NCBI RefSeq assembly: GCF_032191835.1
Contig: NC_083227.1
Location: 105,896,001-105,960,000 of the forward strand
DNA from: Heteronotia binoei
Taxonomy: Eukaryota
Length of the DNA: 64,000 nucleotides
Direction of reading: 5' to 3'
Shown: positions 29,613 to 61,800 of the stretch, piece by piece
Numbering within the stretch: the first letter of the stretch is position 1
Layout: each line of letters starts with the position of its first letter
Translations under genes and position numbers: made by a program
Notes under the pieces: model-generated
Told to the model about the DNA's origin: nothing
The model's database searches: none
Seen by the model: only the letters and a program-made list of their open reading frames with translations

Positions 29613-29748
29613 ATGATCAGCTTGATTTTCTGCAGATGCTGCTGCTTGGCAACCAACAAAGCCCTAGCAGTTGGGCTTGTTCTGCTGGCTGTTGAGAACT
29701 GTACTACCTTGAAGCAGGGAGTTCCCCGTCTCCGCCTCTCATATAAAG
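29613..29748 (+). CDS. SEMA3D-like coding exon 1 (signal peptide; [11 protein letters not shown]...VPRLRLSYK)
   Basis: ATG at 29613 with an in-frame upstream TAA at 29532; hydrophobic [11 protein letters not shown]; PRLRLSYK motif; donor G|GTAGGA, phase 1. A candidate acceptor TTTTTAG ends at 29527. Confidence 0.88.
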
Positions 29749-35700: not shown

Positions 35701-38700
35701 CCGTTTTCACAGGCTTCTCCCCGCCCCCAGCCAGCTGGCCGGCGGGGGAAGCCTCACCCCCTACAAGCTCCTGCAGGTCCGTTTTTAAAACATGTGCCTT
35801 TAAGCCTGAGCAGGAAGCAGGAAACAGGAAGGGCTTTGGAGAACGGCCCCTCCCTTTCTTTTGCTTTCGTTTTCAGATGAAGTAAAGTTCTGCAGGAACA
35901 AGACCCAGTAAGTATTTGTGTGTGAGAGAGAGGGAGGGGGCAGGGGATTCCCTGGTTTGGAAGCCCTTCCCCCGCTTTAGAAAGTGTGTGTGGGGGGGGG
36001 GAGGGAAATGTCTACTGGGCACTTTATTATTCCCTATGGAGAACAATTCCCATAGGGAATAATGGGGAATTGATCCACGAGTATTGGGGGCTCTGGGGGG
36101 GGGCCTATGTTTTGAGGTAGAGGCACCAAATTTTTAGTATAGCATCTAGTGCCTCTCCCCAAAATACCCCCCCAAGTTTCAAAATGGTTGGACCAGGGGG
36201 TCCAATTCTATGAGCCCCAAAAGATGGTGCCCCTATCCTTCATTATTTCCTATGGAAGAAAGGCATTTAAAAAGGTGTGCTGTCCCTTTAAATGTGATGG
36301 CCAGAACTCCCTTGGAGTTCAATTATGCTTGTCACACCCGTGTTCCTGGCTCCACCCCAATGTCTCCTGGCACCACCCCCAAAGTCTCCTGGCTCCACCC
36401 CCAAAGTCTCCAGATATTTCTTGAATTGGACTTGGCAACCCTACTTCAAGGATCTTTTTGTTGCCCCACTGAGAGTTTCTCATGCACTGATGTGGGGTAC
36501 ACCTAGGTTTCCCAAGTGCTCCTGTGCCATTTCAAGTTAGGAAAACAGCATAGGGGGACAGCCTTAAGTCTCCTCTCCTCACACAGAGTCCAAATCTAAA
36601 TAGGGTATGTGTGCCTGCCTTGGATTGACTTTCCAACAAAATACTTATGATATGTGTTTAATTACATGGATCCAGGGAGAACTATAATGTCTTTTTTTCT
36701 TTTTTTGCCATCTTGTAATTTTTTTATATCTTGTTATTTATTTTATTCCCCATCATGGCATAGCCAACTTATGGCAACACCATAGGATTTTCAAGGCATT
36801 GCTTGCCTCTGTGTGGGATCTGTGTAGGATCCCTGGACTTCCTTGGTAGTCTCCCATCCAAGTACTAACCAGAACTGACCCTGTTTTGCTCCTGAGATCT
36901 GACAAGATCAGGCTAGCCTAGGCTGACCAGGTCAGGGCACGTAACATCTAGTAAAGCTCTAATGTGGTTTAAATAGTGAGTGAGACTGGGTGTGCATTTA
37001 CCAGGCTCATCTACTTGAGAAGACCTGACAGGCCCTTTAATCAACACATTAACGCTAAACCCACAGACAACCAGTATTGCTTGTTTGTTGTGTCTGTACA
37101 CTGGTCAGGGGAAGGGGTTGGTTTCCTAGGGACAGACCCAGAGATGGCTATAGTGGAGTACCCATCCACCTGCGTTTGTGTCCCTCTTAAACCCAGGGAG
37201 TGAAACCTTCACTGTTTCCATGCTCTACCTTGCAGATCTGCTCAGGCTAAACAGTTCCCACCAACTATTAAACTCAGAGGATGACCTTGCATTCCAGTCA
37301 CTTCTTGTGGATGAGAACAGGGCATGGCTGATGGCAGGCGCTAAGAACCACGTATTCTTGTTGCACCTTGACAATCCCAATGAAGAGCCTCAGAAGGTCA
37401 GTACCAAAGGAGGTTGCCGTGTTCCCAATAACATATGGAGGGAGTTGGCTGCTTCAGCATTAGTGAAATCCAGAGGTCAGCATACCAGACCCCTCATTTT
37501 GCCAGACATTCTAAACCCACCGCTGGCCCTGAGCAAAATCCAACTTAATGTTCACCAGAAGGGTACACCTACTTTCTATTGTGCTGATTGTATTTTCTTT
37601 TCCAGATTTTCTGGCCAGCCCCTATAGAGCAAATGGAGCACTGTCGATTGGCTGGGAAGAATCCTGAGGTAAAGTGGGCTGCACAGAGACTTCATGGCTT
37701 AAGAAGAGGTGCTTCTGGGGTTTTTGAATGACTTGGTGAACTGTGGAGTTTTGGAGTTATTTACATATATATTTATATGGAACACTTCTCTCTTAGTACT
37801 ACTGTGGCACTAGCTCTGTTAGGGTTACCAGTGAGAAATTTTTGGAGATTTGGGGGCAGAGCCTGGTGAGGGCAGGATTTGGGGAGGGGCAGGACCTCAG
37901 TGAGTTATAATATATACAGAACTGATTTCTGTAGTGTGGACGTCAGTTCTAATCATAGGATATCTCTGCTTGGAGGTTGGCAACCAGTTTGGTGTAGGTG
38001 TCAGGCGTAGGTTCATTGAAGTTCACAAGTAAGCAGACTTGGGTATTTTGAAACAAAGTTGTCTTTATTGGATACTTCAGAGTTACTCCAGCATGGCGGT
38101 TATTGGAACTGATGGAGATCAGCTCGAACTATTGGCATTTAACCTTCTACATCAAAGCAATGGTTTCTACCCCGATTCCCAAAGCAAAAGGTTGCTTTGC
38201 ACATGAGACTTTTCCCCACGCTTCCCCCCCTTATCTTGTCCGTTGGTGGTTACAATTCCCAGAGGCAATGTCCTTGGGCCTCTGGAGAGGAGGTGAGAAT
38301 TTGGCACATACTGTATGCTTCAAAGGGATCTTGCCAACCTTTGATATTCATGGGAAGCGGCCTCTACTCTTCCCCCTCCCCCCTGGTTGTTCCCAGCTTC
38401 TATGTTAGTTAGCATTTCTAGGCAGCATTGTATATGGTTAGTAACAGCATTTCTTAATATCATAAATGAACAGAGCCTGACAGTAGAGGTTAAGAGCCAG
38501 CTTGGTGTAGTGGTTAAGTGCACGGACTCTTATCTGGGAGAACTGGGTTTTATTCCTCATTCCTCCACTTGCAGCTGCTGGAATGGCCTTGGGTCAGCCA
38601 TAGCTCTCGCAGGAGTTGTCCTTGAAAGGGCAGTTGCTGTAAAAGCTCTCTCAGCTCCACCTACCTCACAGGGTGTCTGTTGTGTGTGTGTGGGAGGGAA

Positions 38701-41700
38701 GGTAAAAGAGATTGTGAGCCACTCTGAGACTCTGAGATTCAGAGTATAGGGTGGGATATAAACCCAATATCATCATCAATCATCATCATCAACCCTAAGC
38801 CATATTCCGCATCAATAGCTTATTTAACGGTAAAAACTTAAAAGGAAAGAGAAATGTTTCTAAGTTAGTCAGTTTAACTGCTAAAGGTAACTTTTGAAGA
38901 TAAAAGTAGTCTTGAAATAAAATTGTCAAGCGCGCTCATTTCTGTAATGTATTTTTCTAGACAAAGAGCAGGTCACCAGCTCTCTATTGCTTCCCCCTTA
39001 TTTAGTCAGTGGTCAAGTAATAAATTCATCTGGCCCTAGGATGTTTATGCTACAGCCTGGCTGACATTACCTTCAAGTCGCCTCTCCCACAGTTTCACAC
39101 ACACAAACCTTATCTTCTCCCAGAGTAGTGTAGTTTGATGTTTCCAATAGTCTAAAATTCCTTAGTAATAAAATATAGTGGTTTAGTAACCATTGAACCC
39201 GTGACTCAAGCATGCATCTGTATGGTAACCTTTGATGATATCCTAAATAGCAACCGTGTAACTGTGTGTATGTCATTACTCCCAAGGCTTGTGTCCTTGG
39301 TACAGCTCCTGAGTTTCTAACAATAAAACTACTTTGATTTAAAACAAAGAACTGGTTATTGAGAAATATCAGTGCTTGACAAAAATGTTGCTGAGATGTA
39401 AAGTTAACCTTGCATTCTTTTTTCTTGTTCTTTTCAAAGAGTGACATGCAGGGCTTTTATTCTGGAAAAAGAGGTGCCAGAACTCTCAAGAGGGAAGTGA
39501 AGGAAAAACACATGGGTGTCCCTTATGAACTTTTAAACATTTTTTGAGAATTCTGTTTCCACAAAGAGGTTCCAGAACTCCATTCCACCATATTCCCTCA
39601 GAAAAAAAGCCCTGGTTTGTTTATAAATGAGTTATGGTAGTGGAAAGTGGTAACCCTATGGGATTTTCAGGGCAAGAGCTGTTCATGGGTGGTTTGGCAT
39701 TGTCTGGCTGGCTTCGCATCACATACCTGGTATTCCTTGGCAGTATTACAAATACTGACCAGAGGCAATTCTGCTTAGCTTTTGAGATCTGATGAGATTA
39801 GAATCATGGAGTTGGAAGGGACCTCCAGGTTCATCTAGTCCAACCCCCTGCACAGTGCAGGAAATTCACAAACACCTCATCCCCACACTCCAGTGGCACC
39901 TGCTTCATGCCCAGAAGATGGCAAACAAACCACCTTACAGAATCTCTGGCCAAACTGGCCAAGAGAAAAATTGCTGCCTGACCCCAAAGTGGTGAACAGT
40001 ATTTCCTGGGCATGTAAGAAAGAAGAAGAAGAAGAAGATATTGGATTTCTATCCCGCCCTCCACTCTGAAGAGTCTCAAAGTGGCTCACAATCTCCTTTA
40101 CTTTCCTCCCCCACAACAGACACCCTGTGAGGTGGGTGGGGCTGGAGAGGGCTCTCACAGCAGCTGCCCTTTCAAGGACAACCTCTGACAGGGCTATGGC
40201 TGACCCAAGGCCATGCCAGCAGGTGCAAGTGGAGGAGTGGGGAATCAAACTCAGTTCTCCCAGATAAGAGTCCGCGCACTTAACCACTACACCAAACTGG
40301 CTCTCCACAAGAACTAAGCACTGATGCAACCCATCCTGCCCTCCTCATAATCTGCCTAAGTTCACAGAATCTGTATTGCTGTCAGATGGCCATCTAGCCT
40401 CTGATTAGGTTAGTGTGGGCAATCCAGGTCAGGGCAATACTTACTATATATTATTATATATTATTAAATCCAGATCCTGATATCTGAGGCTAAACTACCT
40501 CAGATTCTGCTACACCTAAAACTGTAATGTTGATGCAATGGGCTCTGTACTAGGAACACTGGGACAAACCAGAGGTGTTCAAATAAAATCTGTCCTTTTT
40601 CTATGTCATTCTTGCTAGATGGAATGTGCAAATTTCATCCGCCTCTTGCAGCGTTTCAATAACAGTCACATTTTTGCCTGTGGAACAGGCTCCTATCAGC
40701 CCATGTGTGCCTTCATACAGCTCAAAGAGAGAGCGGAGGTGAGTTGCCAGAGACTTACCAAGAAGCAGTCATTTCAGACAGTGAGTTGTAGATGGGATGC
40801 CAGTGCTTCTGCACCCATCTTTGGGTGTCACTAAAACAAAAAAGATCAAGGGATAAGGTTAGGTTGACTTTCCAAATAGGGAGCAAATTAAAAAAAGGCC
40901 AAAAAACAGTAAAATATCTCCCATATCTGCAGAGAACAGGCAAAGCACTAATTGAAACTCTAGTTAATCCTTTCTATAGTAAGCAGCATGACTCAAATAC
41001 AGTGCTTAAATAAATGTGTCAGTCTTCAAGGCAACTTTAAGCCTGACTGATAAATTGTCTTTTCAACAGGAAGTGGGGGGGGGGGGGGAATCACCACTCT
41101 GTAAAGGTGCCTAGGATGAGTACAAAAAGTGGGGACCTAATCATTTGAGGTCTTCAAGTAGGACAGAAGTCTGCCATCTCTAGTAGCACCATGCCACCTT
41201 CTTCAATTTTGATCAGGCTTTTGCAGGTACAGATTGAAGACCAACTTCTGTTACAAATTCCTGATAAAATTGAAACCATAGACAGCTGTTGTTGGGGTGG
41301 CAGTGGGGCTAAACTACCTCAGATTCTGCTACACCTAAAGCTGTAATGTTGATGCAACAAATCAAATAATCACATGAAGCTGCAATTCTGTGTGTGTGTT
41401 TGTGGGGGGGGGGGATGTTCAGCTATGCTCTGTATCAAGAAGTACCTATAATCCAGTCATATTAGAATTTCCAATCACAGTAGAACTTTCTGGTAAATGT
41501 TTTGGCCATGTGAATGTCACAGCATGCCTGAAGATTTAGTTTGACTCTGATCATCAGCATCTTTAGCTATCAGGGTAAGATAAGAAAAAGTAAAATTTTC
41601 AACAAGTACTACTGAATAGTTCTGTCAGAAAAATCCCTGGAAAGGAACAAACAAATCCTCTGGTCCAAGCCCATGCAACAAGGCAGAACCATCCATCTAG

Positions 41701-47700: not shown

Positions 47701-50700
47701 GATGTGTGTTCCCATACACAGCAAGAGAAGCTGTCCCCTCATTCTTGCCTTCTGGAATGGCCTGCTGAGATCCTGAATCCTCTCTGTATGCAGAAAAACA
47801 AAAATGTATTAGATTCAACATTTAAGCAGTATATTCCACAGTATATGCCAGCCTGTTACTGCAGTTGAAGCAAACTGTGAGATAGTGGTATCATGGAAAA
47901 AACTAAAGGCACAAGAGAAGTTGTTACTGTGTTGTATTTTAATGTTGTGCCTTACACATCCATAGGCAACAGCGTACAAAAACCTAGACCACAAATTGAT
48001 TAGTTTTTGTCATCTTCCTACTACAAAATGGCAAGATTGTTTCTTGTGGAATTGAATGTTCACACACTTACAGTTTTTAACATCTTCATTCTCTGTCAGT
48101 GTCCCAGTGCAACGTACGACCCACTCGTCCAGTCAACAAAAGACTTTCCTGATGAAGTTATCAGTTTCATGCGTACCCATCACCTGATGTGGGATCCGGT
48201 TTATCCACTCCACTGGAAACCTGTTCTGATGAGAGTCAATGTGCCTTTCCAAATCAAGCAGCTCGTAGTGGACAGGGTGGAGACAGCATCTGGACATGTT
48301 GATGTCCTTTTCCTTGGAACAGGTAGAGAGGTCCTAAGCAACAGTGCCTCACAGTCCTTGTTACATACTGCATTTTAAAAATACCCCACCCTTTTCAGAT
48401 TCTGCATTCCAGCTCAGCAAACTAAAGAAGGTGAGGATAGGTATACTGTCCGAACTCCACTGATGAAAAATAAGTATTACCTATTGGAAGCAAGTGTGAT
48501 GTAAGAGCTAGAGTGCAGGACTAGGACCTGGCTTCAAATTTCTACTCAAGCCATCAAGCTTAGTTTCTCTCAGCCTGATCTAGATGATGATGATAGTGGA
48601 AAATCCTGCATACTATCCCAAGCTACATAGAGGAAAAGTCAGGAAAACATGCACTACATATATAGCTATTGCATTGTGTTCCAAAGGAAAGTGATAGTGG
48701 CACTCAGTAGAATCTAAGATTCCAACAGGCCAAGAAATTTGGGATGCCTTCCACTGGATGAACTCTGTGCTATAACTTAGCTGACATACAAGGAAGGGAG
48801 TCCTGCTGAATTCTAAGTTCTTGGTTCTAGGAATGGTCTTCTTCTAAGTTAACTCGGTTTTAGGAATGATCTGGAAGGAGGGAGGGTTTGTTCATCCTTG
48901 TAACCAAGTTTCAGTTGGTAATCGATACACTGGGATTTAGGGCACATCTAGACTCAATATAGGCATGACCCAACTTGGTTCATGCGGAAGCCCCATAAAC
49001 TGTTGATAGTGGCAGGGCGTTTAAAGTACAACTTGGATGGATCAATGGATGGGAGGAACTTGACCCTTCTCCTGAAATGCTTTTGCTTCAGCTGTTTTCC
49101 TCCTTATGGGATGGGTTATATGGGATAGACTTCCTGCTGAGGAGCAATTTTCCAGCCAAGCATGCTGTGTTTTACACAACCCCCCCCCCCACATCTTTAT
49201 AGGGAATCATTTGCAACTCTGTTCTGAAATGTGATTGTGACACTATCATGTCTGGTTTGGCCTTGGGTTCTACTCCAGCAGCATGAAGTATCTGTATGCT
49301 TCCATGCTATTGGTTCTTGCTATTGCTTATTAACACCAGTAGAACTAAAGGAGTTGTTTGTTTGAAAGGTCATTTTGTAAGTGAAGCACGCATCCAGCTA
49401 ATAAAAATCAGCTTCTCTAAAGAGAATTTAAGATCCTGAAATATAAATACAAAATTATATATACAAAATGTACAGCAGGTTTCCATTTGGCTAGAAGTCA
49501 CTGGAAAAATCAGCTCAGTTCTTTGCAGCTATCAAAACAGCGTTAGCGACTCTTAGCACAAAAATGAAACATTAACAAAGAAAAATATCATAATAGTGCT
49601 GCATAAATATTCTTCATAAGTCCACATCTTGGTCTCAGCATGCAGTTCTTCCAATCATCCCCTCTCAGGAAAGAGATATCACAGCAGGAAAATGTGTGGA
49701 AAGGAACAACACGATGATTATGGAATAACTTCTACATGAGGCTGTTCCAGATAGGAAAAAATTACACAGATGTTTGCTCAGCAGTGCTGAACTCCTGAAT
49801 GTTAAAGTGTTTGTACTGATTTTTGAAAATTTCTCATTCATGCTTTAGAGAATGAGAGGTTGCAGATGCCCAGAGCTTCAATAATTGTTTTAGACAAGGG
49901 AAACATCTTAATTCCAAACCTATATAAGGAGTTATCGAGGCAGACTTGGAGCCAAGGTGGGGTGTGTATGTGGGGTGGGGGAGAGAATGGCAGAGGGAGT
50001 GGAGATAACAGTGAAAGCTTTCCACTCCTGTGGCTTGTGTTTCAGTGTAGAAAAAAAGCTAGCAGTTCCCTAAGATGGAGTTGCTACCTTACCACTTCAG
50101 TTTAACAGCACTCAAGGTAGACAATTGTAGAGCATGTAGATAAGCACTATCTGAAGAAGCACCCAATGAAACAACAAGCTGGAGTTGAACTCAACAACAT
50201 GGCTCCCTAGTTCTTAGGTGGGATTACACAATCCACACATATGAAATAAATGAAAATAACCCTGTTGCCACTGCCTTGTATTAATAAAACTCTGGAAACA
50301 TGCCCAATCTTCTGAATTTTACATACATATATTCTGGCAACTGGCCCTGAAGCTGAGGAGGCATCCGGGCTGTTCTTGATTTTTTTTGGCAGGCCTATTC
50401 CTGGTAGTGTTTTGGCACAACAAACCCTTGACCTAGCTGCAAACAGAATGGGAATCAACACTGTTCCCATCTGTTTTATTCAGTTTGCCTGACCCTTGCC
50501 AACCACTCCATTTGGAGCAGCACCTGAAAACAGCCAACTCTAGTAGGCCATGGGCATCTTTCCATCAAAACTGAGAGCTGTTTCATCTAGTCCTCAGGTC
50601 AAGCAATGGCCCTCTGCATTATGGAATGAGAGGAAAGCCATTGCTGGGTTCCAGATTGCAAACATATATGCCTGCAGCCTGAAAAAGAATGCAAAGACCC

Positions 50701-53700
50701 AAGAACTTGTTTGCGTCAGAACACAGAGTGTTATGCTCACAAGGTTTTTAGGCCTCTGCAGCAGAGAAAGACTGATCTATAGGAGATGGATGTATTCTTT
50801 TGGCAACTGGTTTGTATACTGAGCAGTGTCTGACAGTGACATCTTTTAGAAGTGGCTTACTGGATTGAGATAGCCAGTGGCTTTCATACACCATGAAAAT
50901 AATTATATTCAGTTGGAAGTGACAGTCTTTTTCTCCTGACATGTCCTTACCTTTTGCTTTTTCTCCAGATGAAGGCAAAGTGCTGAAGGTGGGCATTGCC
51001 AGCATGAGAGGCCAAGACCCTCAGGAGATTAGCTTGGAAGAGATCAGTATTTCAAAGGTACCTTACTTGTCTGCTTTACCTTTTTGTGGCTATGGCTCAA
51101 TTGAGGAAGCCTCACTGACAAATCATGCCTGTTGAAAACAGCTGCCTTGTCTCTTGGCTCATCTTCATTTGTTAGGATGCTGTTCAATTGGTGCAGCGGA
51201 TCCTTCCCCACCTGGAATCCTGCTGTAGGGCAATAATCCCCACAATCTTCCCTTATAGCCAAGCTTGTTGACGAAGTTCCATGGGGCTCCACCCTGCTCC
51301 CCATGCCTTTCGCTCTCTCCCTAAAGCCCTTAAGACAAGTCAATTGTAGCTTTGAGGATGGCTGTCCTCAATATGCTTATGACCCCAGCTCTGTATCTCC
51401 TTATCTAAATCTCTGGTGATACAGTGGAGATCCTGAGCCACTGTCTGTCTGTCTGCAGTGGTTAAATGGCTAAGAGTGAACAAACTGAAACTGAATCCTG
51501 AGAGACAAAGGTAATGCTGGTTGAGAAGCCTGAGATCTTGAAGGACATTGTGCTTCCCACTTTTGATGGGATTCAGCTGGCTCTTGCTGACATAGTGAAG
51601 AGACTCGGAGCTATATCGGTGGAGCAGTACTGCTAGAGAAGCAAGTTAACACAGCTGTGAAAAATGCTTTCTTCCAATTCAGTTTGCCTGGAAAGTGGCT
51701 GATCTGGTCTCCTGGATCCATGCCACAGTAACATCAAGACTGGACTATTGTAATGTACTCTACAGGGGCCTGCCCTTGAAGTCAGCTTGGAAACTCCAGT
51801 TGGTATAGAATGCTGCAAGCTGGTTACTATTGGGAGCTACTCAGAGTAGGCATTACATCCATTCTGCAGTCTCTCCATTGGCTGCCCACCAGTTACCAAG
51901 CTCAGTTCAAGTGATGACTATCACATACAAGGCACTTCGCGGCCTAGGACCCTCTGATCTGCAACACCACCTCTCCTCCTACCTGCCCTGACAGTTTTGT
52001 TCATCCAAGCAGGGTCCTTCTGGGGATGCCACCCTACAGCTAGGCAAGATTACCATCTGCTTGTACACACTCTGCGTTCTGTTGTTGCCTCCATTTTCTG
52101 GTATTGTCTGCTGAGAAGACCAGGGAGACACCCATATAGGGTTGCCAATTCTGGATCAGGAAATTCTTGAAAGTTTTGAGGGTGCAGCTCAGTGGGGTAT
52201 AATGCCATAGAGTCCACCATCCAGTCAGCCATTTTTCTTCAAGGGAGCTGTAGTCTGGAGGTGAGTTATAATTCCAGGACATTTTTAGGCCCAACTGGAG
52301 GCTGGTAATCCTAACTCAATGGGCCCCCTTAATCATTTTGAAAACTGCTAAGCAGCCCTGATGTGGATAGCCCAGGCAAGCCCAATCTCATCAGATCTCC
52401 AAAGCTAAGCAGGGCTGGCCCTGGCAAGTACTTGGATGGGAGACCTCCAAGGAATACCAGGGCTGGGATGCAGAGGCAAGCCATGGCAAGATGGCTCTCT
52501 GAACATTCAAGCCCCAGTAGGGGTCACCAGAAGTCAATTATGACTTCCAGGCGCACATCCAAGATACCAAAGAAAACTGCTAAGCTATGCAAGTATTAAA
52601 ACTGTATTTAAATTAGATTTTGTTAAGCACACAAAGGTCTATGCTAAGGTACCCTTCTGGGTTTTTTGCAGATGCCTTTGGCCATTCTAGACATGCAGCT
52701 CTCTCTAAAGAGGGTAAGTCTGTATTTGTGAATTTCTCAGTAACATTTTGCTAGAGCTGTTACTTCTACAACAGGGGCAAGTCAACCTCAACACTTCGGA
52801 AGTAAAAACAAGTTAAAGTTTGAGGCTTCTGTACCATCGTGAACTTAGAAGAATTTGGCACTTCAGGTGACTTCTTAGTGGAAAGGGAAACAAAACTTGA
52901 TGTCTCTTGCTATTTTTGGTTCTGTGAGCAGCAGGAGATGTTTGTGACCACCACAAAGGGCTTAGTCCAGCTCTCCCTGTACCGCTGTGAACTCTATGGT
53001 AAAACCTGCATAGGCTGCTGTCTTGGCAGAGATCCCTACTGCACCTGGGATGGCAAGTCCTGCCGGCCCCTCCTGCATACTAAAAAAAGGTGAGGCTGTG
53101 ACCTATTCCATTAGAAAAGTGCCTTTACTCTTCCCAGTATATTCAATTCATGTGTTGGAACACTGTCTTTATATGATAATATTTCCACATTGCCGCAAAA
53201 TTAAACAGGAGGCCAGTGGCTTTTCTGAGTCAGAGCCTGCTTCATCAGATGCATGAAGTGTACATACGTAAGGCAAACAGATAGAGCTACAGACAACAGA
53301 AAGAGGAAAGGGTAGATGTTACTCCTCAAGCTCAGTTTGAAAATATCCAATCAAAAAAGTGGGAACCATTCTGATCTGTGCTATCTTAATTGGATTTGCT
53401 TTATCACATCCCACCATGTCCTTTCCTGGAGTATTTTATTTAAAAGATTTATATATGCTCTTTTCTCCAAAGCATTTCGAGTCTTAAGACTGGTGTCAGG
53501 ACGTAAGTCTACTGCTCCTTGTCCCTAGAACAATACCCTGGCATATGGGTCCTTGAGGTTAAATGCACACAGATAAAGCGCGCGCACACACACACAGAGG
53601 TTTCTTCAAAGATTTGAAAAGATATCACTACGCAGTAGTCTCTATAGCTTAGCAACAGAGAAAATAAAAAAGCTAACTGTTCTATCTAATACATGGATAA

Positions 53701-56700
53701 AGGTAAAGGTAGTCCCTTGTGCAAGCACCAGTTGTTTCTGACTCTGGGGTGATGACGTTTTCACAGCAGACTTTTTTTACGGGGTGGTTTGCCATTGCCT
53801 TCCCCAGTCATTACTTTTCCCCAGCAAGCTGGGTACTCATTTTACTGACATCGGAAGGATGGAAGGCTGAGTCAACTTTGAGCCGACTACCTGAAGCCAG
53901 CTTCCACCAGAATCAAACTCAGGTCATGAGCAGAGAGCTCGGATTGCAGTACTGCAGCTTTACCACTCTGTGCCACGGGGCATGGATACCTGGTATTAGA
54001 TGGCATATCTTTTTGCAGTACAAGAATCCAACCTGTAGTATAAGAATATTCTATATGTTGCAGTCTCTTTTCAAAGATTTAAAAAGATATCACTTCACAG
54101 TACAGTCAGCAATGAAGACCTGCAAATTTAGGGGGAGGTATTTGTGAGTTTTCTGCATTGTGCAGGGGGTTGGACTAGATGACCCTGGAGGTCCCTTCCA
54201 ACTCTGTGATTCTATGATGAAGCACATCATATCAAAGTATACTAGCGTGGCATGGGGTTCTCCTATACCTTTATTATTGCTTTTTGCCCGCTGACATCAG
54301 GTGGTCCTTTGGATCCAATCAGAAATCTCTCGATGGAACTTTCCTGAGGACTTCAATGTCTGCTCCTAATCCCTTCCTGCCATCTGATTAAACAGATGAG
54401 CACAGGTTTTTGTGATTAACCAATTACCACATGCCTGAGTCCAGCCTGGTTTGACTGGGTCAGTCACAGTGCTTGAAAGAGCTGCTCTCTCAAGAGCAGT
54501 TCTCAAGAGTTCTCTCAGCCCCATCTACCTCACAAGGTGTCTGTTGTGGGGAGCGGAAGGGAAAGACGATCGTAAACCATGCTGAGACTCCAAGTGAACA
54601 GGGTACAAATCCAATCTCTTCTCTTCTTCTTGAAAGAGATAAAGATGGTAGCTGCAGGAAGGCTCAAATCACAAACACCTACAAGCTGGACTATGTCCTG
54701 TAGTAATCACTAACTCTTGAGGGAAGTTAAGGTGCTCTGCATCACAAGCGGTAATGAGAGTTTAAAAGCAATTGAATAAAACAAAAATTAAATCAGCCAT
54801 AAAAATGTTAAATCTGGTGTTAATCCCACTTTATATATCTAACAACCATTAGGATTGCTTTTCTGTTGTTTGTAGCTAATTATAACTATATCTGCCTAGT
54901 GGGTTTATACTTCATGCATCTGATGAAATGACCGTTTCATGAAAGCTTATACTGGAATAAATGTGGTTAATCTTTAAGGTGCCACTGGATTCCTGTTTTA
55001 TTGATACATGAATGTGAATTGGATGTGTATTTTACACTGGCAGTCTGTAGCGCAGGGCCTGTTCTTCATACCTTTTAGATCAGTATGTGGGCAGCTCTCC
55101 TTGCTGCTTTTCCTACAAGGCTCTGCTCAGGTGCTTCTGTCCCAGATCCTTTCCTACCACCATTCCTGCTGGACCAGGGACATGTAGGACATTGGCCATT
55201 AGCTTTCAGTTACATCATTGGGAAACAATGATGCAGCAAGCCCAGGCTTGCTCCCTTTCATTGAATTATTACCAGATGACTGTGGGGAAAGGAGAACTCC
55301 TATGTCTCGCTGACAGGATAATGGAAGCAACTGTTTGGGTCTGTAAGCATGAGGTGGCCCCTTACATGCATTCCACTTCCCTGCCAAGTGCTGAGATGCA
55401 CTGTCCTTACATTGACATTCTTCTCCTGTTCATTCCCATCATGGTCTTGGCCCACCAGCACCCTTGAGCTAATCAGTATAGAAGAAACTGTATTGCAGAA
55501 GAGGTTGCAGAAGAAACTGGGTTTAGTCTCTGAACTGTCTTCCTTGCAGGCAAGCACAATGCCAAGATTTGTTAAAAGCCAACCCAATCAGACTATGCCA
55601 AGATCCTACAAAGGGTGAGTCATGGGACATCCACTGGGCACGACTATAAATAAACTATTTCAATGTAAGGAAAGAAAACTACATCCAGCTGGTTTAACTG
55701 GAGAAAACCTCAAAGATTATTTAAATCCAGCCCTTTGCACTGAAGGAGGTTTTAGAGCACCCAAGCTCATCCCTTGCCAGAAGTTGATACAGCTTCCTCT
55801 CTATTTCTCACAGCTGCTAGGGGTGATTAGCCCACAGAACACTGGCTTAAGTGGCGAAGACTTAAACACAGATTTGGAAAGCGACCACCTGGGAAGTGAA
55901 ATCTATCTTGTTTAAAGTGCACATTGATTTACATTGATGTTTGCAGTTGACAGGGCTATTCGTATTAATCCAGCCACAGCTATACAAAAGATGGATAAAT
56001 AGAGGTGCTCACCTGAGTTTCCATAAACACTTGTCAGCTCTGCATTTAGCCATGGATATTAATGTAAACCCCACCATTAATTCAGATCTGCAGCTTTCTG
56101 TAGCTGAGACTGAGGTTTCTTTACACAAGGCACCTGATATTACCCTAACAGGGCAGCTGCATGGGTAGGTTATGGACATCCATATCTCCTAATGATAATT
56201 TCCATATCTGCCTTGCTAAATTGCCTTCTGGCAGGAATCACCCACCTCTGTATTCTGTGCTCTCTAAACAAGGACATTTCTTCTCCTTCAAAGTAGTAAT
56301 TGTTCAAATACAATTTAACTGGTATACAAATGTATTCGGATTAATTTTCTGCTGAACATTGTGCAAAATGGTAGACATACCGTATTTTTCGCACCATAAG
56401 ATGCACTTCCCCCCCAAAAAAAGTGGGGGGGAAAGTGTGTGCGTCTTATGGAATGAAGGTATGTACCTTCCTCCGGGGGGGGGATCTGCTGCCTCCGCCT
56501 CTGATCCCGGCGCTTCCCCCGCGCCTGCCTGCCTGGCTCCAGCTCTGATGCTTACAGCAAGCGCCAGGATCGCTCCCTCCGCCCTCCGATCCCAGCGCTC
56601 GCTTTAAGCACCAGAGCTGAAGCCAGGCAGACAGGCACGGAGAAAGCACGCTGCCCCCTCCACAGCCGGCGCTCGCGAAGCGCTGGGTTTGCGGAGGGGG

Positions 56701-58474
56701 TGGGTGCTTCCTCCGTGCCTGTCTGCCTGGCTTCAGCTGATGCTTAAAGCAAGCGCTGGGATTGGAGGGCAGAGGGAGCGATCCTGGCGCTTGCTGTAAG
56801 CATCAGCTGAAGCCAGGCAGACAGGCACGGAGGAAGCACCCGCCCCCTCCGCAAACCCAGCGCTTCGCGAGCGCCGGCTGTGGAGGGGGCGGCGTGCTTC
56901 CCCCGTGCCTGCGTGCTTGGCTGGGAGACAAGCGGCGAGATCGCTCCCTCCGCCCCCATTACAAACCCAGCACTTCGCAGGGAGCGATCTCGCCGCTTGT
57001 CTCCCAGCCAGGCACGCAGGGAGACAAGCGGCGAGATCGTCTCCCCGCGCCTGCATGCCTGGCTGGGAGACAAGCGGCGAGATCGCTCCCTGCGAAGTGC
57101 TGGGTTTGCGGTGGAGGCGGAGAGAGCGATCTTGCTGCTTGTCTCCCAGCCAGGCACCTGCGTCTAATGCTCCGGAGCGTCTAATGGACCGAAAAATACG
57201 GTAACTCTTTGGGGTAGTGATACTGAAGTTCAGTGATGACAGGCAAGCAAGCAGCAGGGTTTCCCGTGTCCACCAGCAACCAAGGACAGCTACTAATGGT
57301 TTAAGAAAGGAACATACAATTCTTTCTACACAGGTGTTTAAAGTCAACAGTGCGTGGTGCAGGTGCCCACATAGCTAGAACTCAGGAAGGCATCTCATGG
57401 CCTCACTTCCTCAGAGGTGATGGGGTCAGTTTTTTGAAAATGACAGTCAGTGGTTTTCTCTTCCTTACAGGCAGGCATTGAATAAATTTGAGTCCTGACA
57501 CCAATAGTGGGAAAGGAAGTTGAAAAATTCTGATTGTTGTGTATATATATCACAAGAGTGCCCATTATCATTGGACTCTGTGAGCCAAAACTTGTGACAT
57601 CAGGGCTTAAATCCTCCACTGTAAACATTAAAAAAGCAGAGCGCAGGGTGGATTTGGATGGAGTTTTCATGGTTGAGTATATTCCAAAGGAGTTAAATGC
57701 TTTAGTTTTTTCTATCCATTCTGGCCAAACACCATGTCTCTGTTCCTTTCATGCAGGGATTTCACTAGCTGAAGAAAAGGTGATATTTGGGGTGCAGAAC
57801 AACTCAACATTTCTTGAGTGCCTTCCATCTTCCCCACAGACAACAATTCGCTGGCTTGTACAGCGCAGCAATACAGCGATCCTGGAAGAGGTAATGTGGG
57901 TGGGAAGCTAAAGGAAAGGTGTTTTTTTTTATAAACTGTGGGATTCCTGAGTAATGGAAGGAAGAAACAGCAACATTAAGAGAGGACAAGTATGAAGGAA
58001 AGGGAAACTCCTCTATCTTGTCTCTGGCTAAAGAGGCCATGGTTTTGTTCCCTGCAGGTTGGGAGCACTGGCCGCTTTTCAATCCTGGAGCAAGGACTGC
58101 TGATCAGCCAGCTGACACAGGAAGACGCTGGGATCTACCACTGTCAAGGAATGGAGCAGTCCTTTTCCCAAACTCTTATCCACTATGGCCTTCATGTAAT
58201 TGGGAATCAGGCTATGGAAGTTTTAATCTCCAGGACTAGCAAAAATACAGAAACAGCAGCAAGCCACCATAGTATCATCCCCTTGGCAGAGACGCAGCTT
58301 CCTCACAAGAGCTACTCAAGGGCTTTGGGTGCATTCAGCTCCAATTTGGATGAGTTCTGCAATGCTCTCCAGCAGAGGAGAAGGGGGAGGCAGAAAGACT
58401 GGAACCGGAAGTGGCAAAGGCATCACCAGGAAAGCAAGAGAGGAAGAGTGAGGAGGAAGCCTGGGCCTCCATAG
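29613..58474 (+). CDS. SEMA3D-like: Class 3 semaphorin, semaphorin-3D-like (17 coding exons, 771 aa; signal peptide-Sema-PSI-Ig-basic tail)
   Basis: Exons assembled by hand. All 16 introns are GT-AG with matching phases. Exon lengths 136,161,63,120,103,129,146,115,70,145,223,89,42,158,65,134,417 sum to 2316 nt, open to TAG at 58472-58474. Motifs [101 protein letters not shown] identify class 3; TLKQ.VPRL, TYDPLV.ST.DFPD and AEEKVIFG are SEMA3D-like. Paralog versus ortholog needs a phylogeny. Confidence 0.93.
30624..30827. mobile_element. Short TAGGGTTGCCA-family hAT MITE
   Basis: Degenerate TIRs; TSD TGGTAAAC/TTCTAAAC (6/8). Confidence 0.7.
31207..31425. mobile_element. Short TAGGGTTGCCA-family hAT MITE
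   Basis: TIRs; perfect TSD CACCTTCA. Confidence 0.88.
33320..33500 (-). mobile_element. tRNA-derived SINE with LINE-like tail
   Basis: Minus-strand TGGCTCAGTGGTAGAGCATCTGC...GGTTCAG head; a similar head lies at 47412-47500 (+). Confidence 0.6.
35418..35605. mobile_element. Short TAGGGTTGCCA-family MITE
   Basis: TAGGGTTGCCAA...CCAACCCTA; homologous to 31207 in reverse orientation. Confidence 0.7.
35664..36443. mobile_element. Longest (780 bp) TAGGGTTGCCAA-family hAT MITE
   Basis: TIRs; perfect TSD CTTCAAGG; contains both left-end modules seen separately in other copies. Confidence 0.9.
36755..36935 (-). mobile_element. 5S rRNA-derived SINE
   Basis: Minus-strand TTAGTACTTGGATGGGAGACTACCAAGGAA, 5S box C-like. 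Confidence 0.7.
37236..37396 (+). CDS. SEMA3D-like exon 2 (DLLRLNSS...NEEPQK)
   Basis: ttgcag|AT, AAG|gtcagt; 161 nt; [19 protein letters not shown]. Confidence 0.93.
37606..37668 (+). CDS. SEMA3D-like exon 3 ([21 protein letters not shown])
   Basis: ttccag|ATT, GAG|gtaaag; 63 nt; IxWPA..C..AGK motif. Confidence 0.93.
37820..37986. mobile_element. Short TAGGGTTGCCA-family MITE (degenerate)
   Basis: TAGGGTTACCA...TTGGCAACC. Confidence 0.65.
37999..38482 (-). mobile_element. Solo LTR
   Basis: Perfect 8-bp terminal inverted repeat TGTCAGGC...GCCTGACA; TSD GTAGG/GTAGA (4/5); minus-strand AATAAA near 38064. Confidence 0.75.
38493..38792 (+). mobile_element. Full-length Squam3 SINE
   Basis: Pol III A/B box head, CORE-like body, (CAT)n tail. 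Confidence 0.85.
38924..39381 (+). mobile_element. Solo LTR
   Basis: TGTCAAGC...GCTTGACA; perfect 5-bp TSD AAAAT; AATAAA near 39322; homologous to 17797-18321. Confidence 0.82.
39449..39614. mobile_element. CAGGGCTTTT-TIR MITE
   Basis: CAGGGCTTTT...AAAAGCCCTG; no TSD found. Confidence 0.6.
39620..39795 (-). mobile_element. Degraded 5S-derived SINE
   Basis: Minus-strand TCAGATCTCAAAAGCTAAGCAG...AAGGAATACCAGG. Confidence 0.55.
40017..40304 (-). mobile_element. Full-length Squam3 SINE with (TTC)n tail
   Basis: Reverse complement of the 38493 copy. Confidence 0.87.
40488..41357 (+). repeat. 51-bp direct repeat pair (40488-40538, 41307-41357) flanking exon 4
   Basis: GGCTAAACTACCTCAGATTCTGCTACACCTAAA(A/G)CTGTAATGTTGATGCAA, 50/51 identical. 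Confidence 0.92.
40619..40738 (+). CDS. SEMA3D-like exon 4 ([10 protein letters not shown]...KERAE)
   Basis: tgctag|ATG, GAG|gtgagt; 120 nt; ECANFIR, ACGTG. Confidence 0.95.
41953..42055 (+). CDS. SEMA3D-like exon 5 (KPGIPAMQL...[11 protein letters not shown]...LLI)
   Basis: ctgcag|AAA, G|gtaaga; 103 nt. Confidence 0.93.
42408..42485 (-). mobile_element. Sauria/Squam1 SINE 3' fragment
   Basis: GTGCAAGCACCAGTTGTTTCCAACTCTGGGGTGACG matches the 23471 and 53699 copies. Confidence 0.7.
42541..42669 (+). CDS. SEMA3D-like exon 6 ([14 protein letters not shown]...DNWLN)
   Basis: tcacag|AT, G|gtaagt; 129 nt. Confidence 0.95.
43250..43405 (+). mobile_element. L2 LINE 3' end
   Basis: TGTAAGCCGCCTTGAGCC...GGGAGAGCGGAATATAAA...(AATA)n. 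Confidence 0.65.
43960..44105 (+). CDS. SEMA3D-like exon 7 (EPVFIGA...[11 protein letters not shown]...RVARVCK)
   Basis: tcacag|AA, AAG|gtcagc; 146 nt. Confidence 0.95.
44555..44870. mobile_element. Squam3/CORE SINE fragments in opposite orientations
   Basis: Match the Squam3 3' region. Confidence 0.6.
45272..45386 (+). CDS. SEMA3D-like exon 8 ([27 protein letters not shown]...FDQL)
   Basis: tggcag|AAT, G|gtaagt; 115 nt. Confidence 0.96.
46069..46138 (+). CDS. SEMA3D-like exon 9 (EDVFLL...[11 protein letters not shown])
   Basis: ctgcag|AA, AG|gttagt; 70 nt. Confidence 0.94.
46900..47044 (+). CDS. SEMA3D-like exon 10 ([12 protein letters not shown]...PYPRPGT)
   Basis: tcctag|T, ACA|gtacgt; 145 nt. 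Confidence 0.96.
48100..48322 (+). CDS. SEMA3D-like exon 11 (CPSATYDP...VLFLGT)
   Basis: tgtcag|TGT, G|gtagag; 223 nt. Confidence 0.96.
50969..51057 (+). CDS. SEMA3D-like exon 12 (DEGKVLKV...LEEISISK)
   Basis: ctccag|AT, AAG|gtacct; 89 nt. Confidence 0.92.
51345..52060 (+). mobile_element. Degraded L2 LINE RT/3' fragment
   Basis: YAYDPSS (YADD-like), [25 protein letters not shown]...KLQLV motifs. Confidence 0.75.
52137..52313. mobile_element. Short TAGGGTTGCCA-family MITE
   Basis: TAGGGTTGCCAA...CTGGTAATCCTA. Confidence 0.7.
52364..52560 (+). mobile_element. 5S rRNA-derived SINE
   Basis: CAGATCTCCAAAGCTAAGCAGGG...AGTACTTGGATGGGAGACC...GGAATACC followed by a non-5S tail. Confidence 0.78.
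52672..52713 (+). CDS. SEMA3D-like exon 13 ([14 protein letters not shown])
   Basis: ttgcag|ATG, AGG|gtaagt; 42 nt, the short exon typical of class 3 semaphorins. Confidence 0.92.
52932..53089 (+). CDS. SEMA3D-like exon 14 (PSI domain; QEMFV...[16 protein letters not shown]...HTKK)
   Basis: gagcag|CAG, AG|gtgagg; 158 nt; tandem NAG acceptors make the exact start uncertain by +/-3 nt. Confidence 0.93.
53699..53980 (-). mobile_element. Sauria/Squam1-type SINE
   Basis: (ACCTTT)n tail and conserved body. Confidence 0.87.
54916..54952 (+). ncRNA. Minimal hammerhead ribozyme motif in a Penelope terminal fragment (54905-54995), sense strand of intron 14
   Basis: GCAU-CUGAUGA-A-AUGA-ccguu-UCAU-GAA-AGCU-U-AUAC; core intact, one mismatch in stem I. 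Confidence 0.5.
55550..55614 (+). CDS. SEMA3D-like exon 15 ([22 protein letters not shown])
   Basis: ttgcag|G, G|gtgagt; 65 nt, phase 2/1 as required; QD..K..P...C aligns to QDVKYGDPITQC of SEMA3D. Confidence 0.9.
56380..57201. mobile_element. Non-autonomous Tc1/mariner-superfamily element (Tc2/Kanga/MER104-like TIR) with CpG-rich palindromic interior
   Basis: TA|CCGTATTTTTCG...CGAAAAATACGG|TA; TA TSD. Confidence 0.88.
57757..57890 (+). CDS. SEMA3D-like exon 16 (Ig domain start; [22 protein letters not shown]...LEE)
   Basis: atgcag|GG, GAG|gtaatg; 134 nt. Confidence 0.94.
58058..58474 (+). CDS. SEMA3D-like exon 17 (Ig end and basic tail; ...DAGIYHC...DEFC...[11 protein letters not shown])
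   Basis: ctgcag|GTT; open to TAG at 58472-58474. Confidence 0.94.
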   Translation, partial: VGSTGRFSILEQGLLISQLTQEDAGIYHCQGMEQSFSQTLIHYGLHVIGNQAMEVLISRTSKNTETAASHHSIIPLAETQLPHKSYSRALGAFSSNLDEFCNALQQRRRGRQKDWNRKWQRHHQESKRGRVRRKPGPP

Positions 58475-61040: not shown

Positions 61041-61800
61041 CTTACTGTTAATTTGCTAGTATCCAGCACAGTGCCAAACCACATACTGTGTAAAAACTCA
61101 TGCTAAGAAACAGGGCAAGGTGAAAGTGACAATATGAAGGTAGAAAGCCGTGCAGAAATTAAAACTGTTTGTTATTTGTAAAAGCAGTAAAGATCTTCCC
61201 TCCAACAATCCACACACATAAAACACATTTTCTTGTAGCCAGTACTGTTTTATGACTTGGATACAGACAATGTTTATCAGACTAATGTGACCTGTGCTTC
61301 AAGATTTTGAGAGTGAGTGCATGCTTATTTCAACAACCTATCAAGGACCACACAGCAGAAAGGACTGTACATTCTGAGGTAGAAAAAAGGGGTTGGAATT
61401 GCTGATAATATCCATTCCCTGACAAACAGGCTGCCCCATTACCCAGTCATATTTGGCTGAATCAGGCATGAAGAATTGAGTGAATTCACCCTTCCTCACT
61501 TAAAATATCCACTAACCTTCAGCTTCTATATGACAAATGCCCACATCCAGCTAAAGTTAAGCATGATTTAAGTTCCACTGAAACCAATAGAACAATTAAT
61601 TTTTATGAATTGTTTGCTAGTCTATGACTGTTATAAATAAATACATTCATTAAACAATTAGTTACCCACTGCTTTTAACAGGGCAGTCTAGACTAGAGTT
61701 AGCCCAAGTGTGGTTTCTGTGCAAGAAATGCTGTGAGCTGGAAAACAAAGGCCAGATTCATTCCAAACCAAGATCACTGGACTGGTTCTAATGTTTGAAG

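What the first reader, a model, noticed from the sequence alone, without database searches (positions are those of the whole stretch)
29613..58474. Complete, compact and divergent SEMA3D-like paralog: candidate class 3 semaphorin without a mammalian ortholog
Seen: an intact 771-aa reading frame with class 3 exon architecture within 29 kb. Against the recalled human SEMA3D sequence, even the best conserved exon (exon 8) matches only about 27/38 residues, too low for a normal amniote SEMA3D ortholog. Known: class 3 semaphorin clusters arose in the vertebrate genome duplications (SEMA3A/C/D/E and SEMA3B/F/G regions). Inference: this may be an additional ohnolog retained in reptiles, perhaps related to fish sema3h or sema3d-like genes, with uncharacterised function.
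Basis: partly seen in the sequence, partly recalled or inferred. Interest (0 to 1): 0.7.

Follow-up and report, generated by a model that had tools for sequence, protein, structure and literature searches.

The report
Intact non-mammalian SEMA3D-like semaphorin gene
This is an intact gecko gene, kept by selection, for a secreted class 3 semaphorin that is not SEMA3D itself but the reptile and bird counterpart of an unnamed fish gene (zebrafish si:dkey-49n23.1), a guidance-cue subfamily that is annotated in many genomes, unstudied, and apparently absent from humans.

Summary
A 17-exon, all GT-AG gene on the + strand (29613-58474) encodes 771 aa with the layout of a class 3 semaphorin: signal peptide, Sema, PSI, Ig and basic tail.

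It is not gecko-specific and not unannotated. Orthologs labelled "semaphorin-3D(-like)" occur in lizard (80% identity), turtles, alligator and birds. They share the exon layout and a downstream SNF2-helicase neighbour.

In maximum-likelihood trees these sauropsid genes form one clade with a ray-finned-fish family (sturgeon, gar, bowfin, teleosts; UniProt name Si:dkey-49n23.1). That clade stands apart from canonical SEMA3D and from 3A-type sequences (support 100/99). An AU test rejects a clade with canonical SEMA3D (p = 0.0005).

The sturgeon ortholog lies next to DCAF1, and the chicken one lies on chromosome 12 after an RBM6-like gene. This is the 3p21-type neighbourhood, not the SEMA3A/3E one.

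dN/dS between gecko and lizard is 0.155, so the gene is under purifying selection.

All sauropsid copies carry Cys in place of the P1 Arg of the internal furin site. The C-terminal RVRR site and the tail cysteine are kept.

Three points were not shown: absence from all mammals, ohnolog status, and any relation to sema3h, because no named SEMA3B/C/E/F/G/H sequences could be retrieved. Gecko RNA evidence was unavailable.

Verdict: a real but ordinary new member of an annotated, unstudied subfamily.

The parts
29613..29748 (+). coding exon 1: start codon and signal peptide (hydrophobic core at residues 16-27)
   Evidence: an in-frame stop lies 27 codons upstream
37236..37396 (+). coding exon 2 (Sema domain)
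   Evidence: AG/GT; same 161-nt size in lizard, turtle and chicken
37606..37668 (+). coding exon 3
40619..40738 (+). coding exon 4
   Evidence: a GC donor at 40732 scored marginally higher, and the GT donor at 40738 was chosen
41953..42055 (+). coding exon 5
42541..42669 (+). coding exon 6
43960..44105 (+). coding exon 7
   Evidence: 28/38 identical to canonical sturgeon 3D and 33/38 to the lizard ortholog
46069..46138 (+). coding exon 9
46900..47044 (+). coding exon 10 (Sema)
   Evidence: Pfam Sema E 2e-16
48100..48322 (+). coding exon 11 (Sema)
   Evidence: Pfam Sema E 1.7e-18; PDB Sema3A E 4e-18
50969..51057 (+). coding exon 12
52672..52713 (+). coding exon 13 (42-nt micro-exon)
   Evidence: found only with the lizard guide at relaxed settings; the same 42-nt exon is present in all four orthologs threaded
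52932..53089 (+). coding exon 14 (PSI domain)
   Evidence: weak Pfam PSI hit, E 0.005; all PSI cysteines conserved
55550..55614 (+). coding exon 15: linker holding the degenerate internal furin site (K-K-R-Q-A-Q-C). The Cys571 codon is at 55560-55562.
57757..57890 (+). coding exon 16 (first half of the Ig domain)
58058..58474 (+). coding exon 17: rest of the Ig domain and the basic tail, with Cys734 (58358-58360), the C-terminal R-V-R-R motif (58445-58456) and stop TAG (58472-58474)
61832..62075 (+). conserved block downstream of the stop, probably part of a long 3' UTR of this gene
   Evidence: 80% identical to chicken over 246 bp, 77% to turtle, and part of a 1.4-kb block shared with the lizard. 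The chicken copy lies inside the 3' UTR of an intronless chicken cDNA contig, L002.

Best explanation
The locus is a functional gene for a secreted class 3 semaphorin. It belongs to a separate, unnamed orthogroup, which databases call 'semaphorin-3D-like' in sauropsids and 'semaphorin-3D' or Si:dkey-49n23.1 in ray-finned fishes. It is not the canonical SEMA3D.

Shown here:
- The ORF is intact and all splice sites are canonical.
- The domain order is signal peptide, Sema propeller, PSI, Ig, basic tail.
- The 17-exon layout is shared with the orthologs.
- It falls in a clade with the fish family, apart from canonical 3D and 3A-type sequences.
- It is under purifying selection.
- Gene neighbours are conserved (SNF2 helicase in sauropsids, DCAF1 in sturgeon, RBM6-like in chicken).

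Inferred from what is established for class 3 semaphorins:
- The protein is secreted as a dimer, disulfide-linked through the tail cysteine (Cys734).
- A furin-type protease trims it at the C-terminal R-V-R-R, exposing a C-terminal arginine that docks into the neuropilin b1 pocket.
- It signals through a neuropilin/plexin-A receptor complex to steer axons, vessels or migrating cells.

Inferred lineage-specific twist:
- In all sauropsid copies the P1 arginine of the internal furin site between PSI and Ig is a cysteine.
- In the gecko no R-x-x-R remains at that site. The cleavage that splits other class 3 semaphorins into a weaker Sema-PSI fragment is therefore predicted not to occur.

Also inferred: the subfamily has no human ortholog.
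For: - Gene model.
- Domains: Pfam on exons; PDB Sema3A matches to an exon and to the lizard ortholog over residues 31-583 (E 8e-193).
- Orthologs and identities. Identity is 80% to lizard, 62-70% to turtles, alligator and birds, 51-54% to the fish family, 48% to canonical sturgeon 3D and 36% to a 3A-type sequence.
- Same 17 exons, with nearly identical sizes, in lizard, turtle, chicken and smelt.
- Trees: the X+fish clade has support 100/99 on 768 columns and 100/98 on the C-terminal region against 22 fragments of other class 3 types. The AU test rejects X plus canonical 3D (p 0.0005).
- Shared C-terminal K-[GA]-R-V-R-R-x-P signature in X and the fish family, against R-N-R-R-[HT]-H in the 3D and 3A types.
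- Synteny.
- dN/dS is 0.155 overall and between 0.14 and 0.21 in every domain.
- All structural cysteines are conserved. Position 571 is Cys in 12 of 12 sauropsid rows and Arg in every fish-family, 3D and 3A row that covers the site.
- The chicken ortholog is transcribed: an intronless contig with UTRs.
- Fish orthologs carry the zebrafish symbol Si:dkey-49n23.1 in UniProt names. No paper in the library holds that symbol.
Against:
- No named SEMA3B, 3C, 3E, 3F, 3G or sema3h sequence could be retrieved. The other C-terminal types are unnamed fragments that I labelled from remembered motifs. Formal exclusion of orthology to a 3p21 gene (3B/3F/3G) therefore rests on database naming and on zebrafish nomenclature, not on a tree made here.
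- Identity to the fish family (51-54%) is only slightly above identity to canonical 3D (48%). The grouping depends on the tree, and the sauropsid stem is long (0.50 changes per site), which invites long-branch effects.
- Receptor binding, secretion, dimerisation and furin processing are all inferred.
- The identity of the SNF2 helicase as RAD54L2, and the human map positions, come from memory and protein length only.
Confidence: 0.8

Rival explanations
1. It is simply the gecko's canonical SEMA3D, evolving fast.
For: Automatic names of the orthologs say semaphorin-3D or semaphorin-3D-like. Canonical 3D is among the nearest paralogs by C-terminal similarity.
Against: - The trees place it with the fish Si:dkey-49n23.1 family and apart from canonical 3D.
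- The AU test gives p 0.0005 against a clade with canonical 3D.
- Canonical-type and X-type genes coexist in Acipenser ruthenus (P0033 and P0187). Both types occur in birds (P0007 and P0188 against P0063 and P0115) and in squamates (P0010 against P0235).
- Neighbours are an RBM6-like gene, an SNF2 helicase or DCAF1, not SEMA3A/3E.
Confidence: 0.03
2. It is a strongly diverged ortholog of one of the mammalian 3p21 genes (SEMA3B, SEMA3F or SEMA3G), so mammals do have it under another name.
For: The orthologs lie in the 3p21-type neighbourhood: chicken chromosome 12 after an RBM6-like gene, and DCAF1 in sturgeon. No named 3B/3F/3G sequence was available for my trees.
Against: - In the exhaustive search with the last exon, 3D-type and 3A-type tails scored E 1e-13 to 1e-10. 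The two fragments that I take for the 3B/F/G type scored only 2e-4 and 7e-4, and they sit across the 100/98 split.
- Annotation pipelines name the family after 3D, not after 3B, 3F or 3G.
- From my own knowledge of the nomenclature, zebrafish has separately named sema3b, sema3bl, sema3fa/fb and sema3ga/gb, while the fish ortholog here keeps a clone-based symbol.
Confidence: 0.1
3. It is an unexpressed or decaying gene copy that merely looks intact.
For: No gecko transcript data could be obtained. The sauropsid stem branch is long. The internal furin site is lost.
Against: - 771 codons lack any stop or frameshift, and all 32 splice sites are canonical.
- dN/dS against the lizard is 0.155, and low in every domain.
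- All structural cysteines are kept.
- Orthologs have been retained since the sauropsid-fish split.
- A conserved 3' UTR block and conserved upstream blocks are present.
- The chicken ortholog is transcribed.
Confidence: 0.03

Closest known systems
Sauropsid 'semaphorin-3D-like' genes (lizard Elgaria P0235, turtle Emydura P0145, alligator P0093, chicken chr12 P0115, Zosterops P0063)
   Same: - Orthologs at 62-80% identity.
- The same 17 coding exons.
- The same downstream SNF2-helicase neighbour.
- The same Cys at the furin P1 position.
- The same K-G-R-V-R-R tail.
   Different: - The gecko and lizard copies have also lost the R-R-A-R that still precedes the Cys in turtles, alligator and most birds.
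- The gene spans 29 kb in the gecko, 4.8 kb in chicken and 45 kb in Elgaria.
Ray-finned-fish family named Si:dkey-49n23.1 in UniProt and 'semaphorin-3D' in NCBI (sturgeon P0341/P0187, gar P0315, bowfin P0331, smelt P0203)
   Same: - Sister clade in both trees.
- The same exon layout.
- The same C-terminal R-V-R-R signature and tail cysteine.
- The sturgeon gene lies next to DCAF1, which fits the sauropsid helicase neighbourhood.
   Different: - Only 51-54% identity.
- The fish copies keep the canonical internal K-R-R-A-R-R furin site and a more basic tail.
Canonical SEMA3D (sturgeon P0033, garter snake P0010, bird fragments P0007 and P0188)
   Same: The same class, domain order and cysteine framework. 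It is among the nearest paralogs by similarity, with 48% identity and exon 8 at 28/38.
   Different: - A separate clade; joining the two is rejected at p 0.0005.
- A different tail signature, K-K-K-R-N-R-R-H-H.
- It coexists with the X-type gene in the same species.
SEMA3A (solved structures 1Q47, 4GZ8, 4GZA, 7M0R)
   Same: The lizard ortholog aligns over Sema-PSI at E 8e-193, and a gecko exon aligns at E 4e-18. The expected fold and receptor logic (neuropilin plus plexin-A) are taken from this protein.
   Different: - 3A-type sequences sit across the 100/98 split.
- The internal furin site is altered and the tail is different.
Zebrafish sema3h
   Same: By my own knowledge, a class 3 semaphorin without a mammalian namesake.
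   Different: Not tested, because no named sema3h sequence could be retrieved. The fish orthologs found here carry another zebrafish symbol, so sema3h is probably a different gene. Only 7 papers in the library mention sema3h, and none treats its phylogeny.

Membership tests
Class 3 (secreted) semaphorins | Sema domain | tested here: met
   Pfam PF01403 on exons 10 and 11 (E 2e-16 and 1.7e-18). PDB Sema3A match. The ortholog aligns to Sema3A over residues 31-583.
Class 3 (secreted) semaphorins | PSI domain followed by a single Ig-like domain | tested here: met
   The PSI hit (E 0.005) and the V-set hit (E 0.004) on single exons are weak and below Pfam's cut-offs. However, every PSI and Ig cysteine is conserved in the alignment, and the orthologs carry PF01437, PF00047 and PF28354.
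Class 3 (secreted) semaphorins | Basic C-terminal tail with a furin-type R-x-[KR]-R site and a tail cysteine; no membrane anchor | tested here: met
   R-V-R-R at residues 763-766, Cys734, and a stop five residues after the motif. No hydrophobic segment follows the Ig domain. Cleavage and dimerisation themselves were not tested.
Class 3 (secreted) semaphorins | N-terminal signal peptide | tested here: inconclusive
   A hydrophobic core at residues 16-27 (Kyte-Doolittle mean up to 2.98), at the position of the orthologs' N-termini. No signal-peptide predictor was available.
Class 3 (secreted) semaphorins | Binds neuropilin and signals through plexin-A | not testable with these tools
   Inferred from family membership only.
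Canonical SEMA3D orthogroup | Falls inside the SEMA3D clade | tested here: not met
   The AU test rejects the clade at p 0.0005.
Canonical SEMA3D orthogroup | Lies beside SEMA3A/SEMA3E | tested here: not met
   There are no other semaphorin exons in the 64-kb window. The orthologs are flanked by an RBM6-like gene, an SNF2 helicase or DCAF1. The flanks reached are only 5-29 kb.
Canonical SEMA3D orthogroup | It is the only SEMA3D-type gene in the genome | not testable with these tools
   Only this window of the gecko genome is available. In Acipenser ruthenus both types exist.
Si:dkey-49n23.1 / 'semaphorin-3D-like' orthogroup | One clade with the fish and sauropsid members, with branching that follows the species tree | tested here: met
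   squamates, turtles, and alligator plus birds on one side; sturgeon, gar and bowfin, and teleosts on the other.
Si:dkey-49n23.1 / 'semaphorin-3D-like' orthogroup | Shared gene neighbourhood | tested here: inconclusive
   An SNF2 helicase of 1467-1484 aa lies tail-to-tail with the gene in chicken, alligator, turtle and lizard. DCAF1 lies downstream in sturgeon. That the helicase is RAD54L2, and that RAD54L2 and DCAF1 are neighbours in human 3p21.2, is from memory. The gecko window ends before any neighbour.
sema3h orthogroup | Clade with zebrafish sema3h | not tested

The most novel reading that the evidence does not exclude
The sauropsid 'SEMA3D-like' genes and fish si:dkey-49n23.1 form an unrecognised additional class 3 semaphorin subfamily. 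It dates at least to the bony-vertebrate ancestor, sits in the RAD54L2/DCAF1 part of the 3p21-type paralogon, and was lost in the mammalian line. In sauropsids the arginine-to-cysteine change destroyed the inactivating internal furin site, completely so in squamates. This would yield a guidance cue that cannot be switched off by that cleavage and may gain an extra disulfide.
Probability: 0.5. Interest if true: 0.55.

Novelty: new member of a known kind. Interest (0 to 1): 0.4.

Why it matters
Textbook accounts give vertebrates SEMA3A to SEMA3G, plus a fish sema3h. Here a further class 3 gene appears, conserved from sturgeon to birds and geckos and hidden under the label "semaphorin-3D(-like)".

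That label can mislead orthology-based work. Bird, reptile or fish "SEMA3D" expression or knock-down data may concern the wrong gene.

If the subfamily is really missing from mammals, chick and zebrafish, the two main non-mammalian models for axon and vessel guidance, carry a neuropilin/plexin ligand that mouse genetics cannot reveal.

The sauropsid-wide replacement of the furin P1 arginine by cysteine is a natural experiment on how proteolysis tunes semaphorin activity.

For the gecko genome itself the result is an ordinary one: a correct gene model and its proper orthology.

Tried and rejected
- **Neighbour genes in the window.** The 29 kb upstream and 5.5 kb downstream hold only repeat-like ORFs and conserved noncoding blocks, so synteny had to come from orthologs.
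- **Cluster look-ups.** C-terminal fragments were looked up to obtain named full-length SEMA3A-G anchors. This yielded only 3D-type and fish-family members.
- **Region-limited homolog search.** A search with the turtle tail returned only 8 proteins, because the word index needs shared 5-mers. It gave the lizard ortholog but no view of other taxa.
- **Full-length homolog searches.** The two searches list only the best 120 hits, all sauropsids or all ray-finned fishes. They therefore say nothing about mammals, amphibians, sharks or the other paralogs.
- **Atlas searches.** These gave cluster names without usable ids and did not identify the helicase tail.
- **Unnamed fragment loci.** Loci for two unnamed fragments, P0050 and P0014, gave no diagnostic neighbours.
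- **Look-ups that found nothing.** Gar and Betta look-ups found no record.
- **Literature.** No paper holds the symbol dkey-49n23.1. Nothing relevant appears for 'semaphorin-3D-like'. The semaphorin evolution paper PMC6374515 does not resolve class 3.
- **Earlier scan notes.** Notes of this scan hold nothing on RAD54L2 or RBM6 in this genome.
- **Joined protein model.** The joined 771-aa model has no reference. It was built only inside scripts, from window.fa, for local alignment, trees and dN/dS. It was never sent to a search tool. Database searches used single exons by reference, or ids of orthologs. The search with the joined model was left out.
- **Fragment P0012.** P0012 is an unnamed 3D-type fragment seen on many metagenome contigs, so it is possibly host-derived and mammalian. 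It was used only as one row in the tree and was not pursued.

Full report
**What is in the sequence**

The window comes from a gecko; earlier notes of this scan name it Bynoe's gecko. On the + strand between 29.6 and 58.5 kb, the stop-to-stop open segments contain a series of peptides that read as a class 3 semaphorin. Pfam finds the Sema domain on two of these segments (E 2e-16 and 1.7e-18). It also gives weak PSI and V-set hits on the segments that should hold those domains. The largest Sema exon matches the solved Sema3A structures at E 4e-18.

I mapped the turtle and lizard orthologs onto the window. For each of the 16 junctions I then searched for donor and acceptor pairs that keep the frame and best fit the lizard protein. 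The result is a model of 17 coding exons. Every intron is GT-AG behind a pyrimidine tract. The CDS is 2316 nt, which gives 771 residues plus TAG, from ATG 29613 to stop 58472-58474.

Two small exons, 52672-52713 and 55550-55614, appear only with a close guide protein.

The joined protein has no reference. It was made only inside scripts and was not sent to any search tool. Searches were done exon by exon or with ids of orthologs, and the joined search was left out.

**It is a maintained gene**

The same 17 exons, with almost the same sizes, were recovered by exact threading of the annotated proteins onto the lizard, turtle, chicken and smelt loci.

dN/dS between gecko and lizard is 0.155 (dS 0.69). 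It lies between 0.14 and 0.21 in the Sema, PSI-linker, Ig and tail parts. All cysteines of the Sema, PSI and Ig framework, and the tail cysteine, are conserved.

I could not obtain gecko RNA data. For chicken, a public assembly contig (L002) carries the whole ORF without introns, with 308 nt of 5' UTR and 755 nt of 3' UTR. The chicken ortholog is therefore transcribed.

**Who its relatives are**

- An exhaustive profile search with the last exon found the closest clusters in a turtle and in birds. After these came fragments with other class 3 tails.
- Cluster look-ups led to full-length bird proteins.
- A homolog search with one of those bird proteins listed 120 sauropsid proteins named semaphorin-3D or semaphorin-3D-like, from birds, alligator and turtles.
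- A lizard ortholog, Elgaria P0235, came from a further search.

Identity of the gecko protein to these and other sequences:

| Compared with | Identity |
|---|---|
| Lizard ortholog | 80% |
| Turtles, alligator, birds | 62-70% |
| Ray-finned-fish family | 51-54% |
| Canonical SEMA3D of sturgeon | 48% |
| A 3A-type sequence | 36% |

The ray-finned-fish family was found through smelt P0203. NCBI mostly calls it semaphorin-3D. UniProt, by projection from zebrafish, calls it Si:dkey-49n23.1. It includes sturgeon, gar, bowfin and many teleosts.

**Orthology**

Trees:
- A careful maximum-likelihood tree used 27 sequences and 768 columns. It unites the 12 sauropsid genes with the 12 fish genes, against canonical SEMA3D (sturgeon P0033, garter snake P0010) and a 3A-type sequence (P0055, confirmed as Sema3A-like). 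Support is 100/99, and both halves follow the species tree.
- Forcing the sauropsid genes together with canonical SEMA3D costs 26.7 log-likelihood units and is rejected (AU p = 0.0005).
- A second tree, on the last ~220 residues, adds 22 fragments of other class 3 tail types. It again isolates sauropsid plus fish as one group (100/98).

Tail signatures:
- The group shares a C-terminal K-[GA]-R-V-R-R-x-P signature. The 3D and 3A types end in R-N-R-R-[HT]-H.

Coexistence:
- Canonical-type and X-type genes both exist in Acipenser ruthenus (P0033 and P0187).
- Both types occur in birds and in squamates.

**Synteny**

- In chicken the gene is on a 20.1-Mb chromosome record (GRCg7b CM028493.1; chromosome 12 by my memory). 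It lies after a 1180-aa protein with OCRE and G-patch domains (RBM6-like) and before a 1473-aa SNF2 helicase on the other strand.
- The same tail-to-tail helicase (1467-1484 aa) follows the gene in lizard, turtle and alligator.
- In sturgeon the downstream gene is DCAF1. In a second sturgeon species the downstream gene is 1513 aa long, about DCAF1's length by my memory.
- From memory, human RAD54L2 (1467 aa) and DCAF1 are head-to-head neighbours at 3p21.2, and RBM6 is at 3p21.31. If that holds, the family belongs to the 3p21-type region (the SEMA3B/3F/3G side). It does not belong to the 7q21-type region that holds SEMA3A/C/D/E, and no semaphorin occupies the corresponding human position.
- The gecko window itself ends before any neighbour gene. 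It contains no second semaphorin.

**How it most likely works**

By its parts, the protein should behave as class 3 semaphorins do. It should be secreted, be dimeric through the Sema interface and the tail cysteine (Cys734), and be trimmed at the C-terminal R-V-R-R (residues 763-766). That trimming would leave a C-terminal arginine to engage neuropilin, with signalling through plexin-A. All of this is inference from the family. None of it was tested.

One feature is specific. At the internal furin site between PSI and Ig, the fish family and the 3D and 3A types have K-R-R-x-R-R followed by Q-D. All 12 sauropsid sequences have Cys at the last arginine (gecko Cys571, codon 55560-55562). Turtles, alligator and most birds still have R-R-A-R before the Cys. 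The lizard has K-K-R-R-A-Q-C and the gecko K-K-R-Q-A-Q-C, with no R-x-x-R left.

This agrees with another first-stage note on this window (s1-325732) and extends it. The cysteine is a trait of the whole sauropsid clade, not of the gecko alone. The change coincides with a long stem branch (0.50). In other class 3 semaphorins, cleavage at this site yields a shorter, less active or differently active fragment. That is established knowledge, not tested here. The gecko protein is therefore predicted to stay full length. Whether Cys571 forms a disulfide is unknown.

**What remains open**

- I could not retrieve named SEMA3B, 3C, 3E, 3F, 3G or sema3h sequences. Each homolog search lists only its best 120 hits, and those were filled by birds or teleosts.
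- Hence three claims are inference: that the family has no mammalian ortholog, that it is not sema3h, and that it arose in the genome duplications.
- That inference is supported by the clone-based zebrafish symbol on the fish orthologs, by the weak similarity to the tails I take for the 3B/F/G type, and by the accepted human catalogue of seven SEMA3 genes.
- The literature library holds nothing on this family.

**Verdict**

The gene is not new to databases and not peculiar to reptiles. It is a new member of an annotated but unnamed and unstudied class 3 subfamily shared by sauropsids and ray-finned fishes. Interest is moderate. The value lies in correcting a misleading label and in pointing to a guidance cue that mouse work cannot address.

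Noticed in passing
window 55560-55562 (Cys571), exon 15: The Arg-to-Cys change at the P1 position of the internal furin site is shared by all 12 sauropsid orthologs examined. It is absent from every fish-family, 3D-type and 3A-type row that covers the site. Squamates have additionally lost the preceding R-R-A-R.
   Followed up: partly
window 61832-62075 (wider block 61741-63140, and 63598-63959): Noncoding block 3.4 kb after the stop. It is 80% identical to chicken and 77% to turtle, and lies within 1.4 kb shared with the lizard. In chicken it lies inside the 3' UTR of the cDNA contig L002, so the gecko transcript probably runs well beyond the reported end of the gene.
   Followed up: partly
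window 14628-14875, 19849-20005, 20407-20859, 21759-22038: Upstream noncoding blocks, 68-81% identical to the region 5-10 kb upstream of the lizard ortholog; two of them are also conserved in turtle. They are candidate 5' noncoding exons, promoter or enhancers. The true transcription start may lie 8-15 kb before the ATG.
   Followed up: no
window 56500-57200 (intron 15): GC-rich (about 51%) array of degenerate direct repeats with spacings of about 190 and 142 bp, with internal inverted segments. It keeps long ORFs open on both strands.
   Followed up: partly
window 26080-27444 (+): A 455-aa open frame with no Pfam family. By eye it resembles the C-terminal part of a LINE ORF2. A short peptide motif recurs in many ORFs across the window (for example near 800, 5450, 8780, 13850 and 36400), pointing to a dispersed SINE or LINE family.
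   Followed up: no
L001 10001-14785 (chicken chr12): The chicken ortholog packs the same 17 exons into 4.8 kb, with introns of about 70-300 bp apart from a 1.1-kb first intron. It is so GC-rich that both strands stay open over long stretches.
   Followed up: no
proteins P0032 and P0213-P0226 (Paralichthys olivaceus, one 29.9-Mb chromosome): The flounder carries many separately numbered, truncated (149-436 aa) 'semaphorin-3D-like' proteins of the fish-family tail type on one chromosome. This suggests a local amplification of the 3' half of this gene.
   Followed up: no
window 36344-36411: A 22-bp tandem repeat, 3.1 copies, in intron 1.
   Followed up: no
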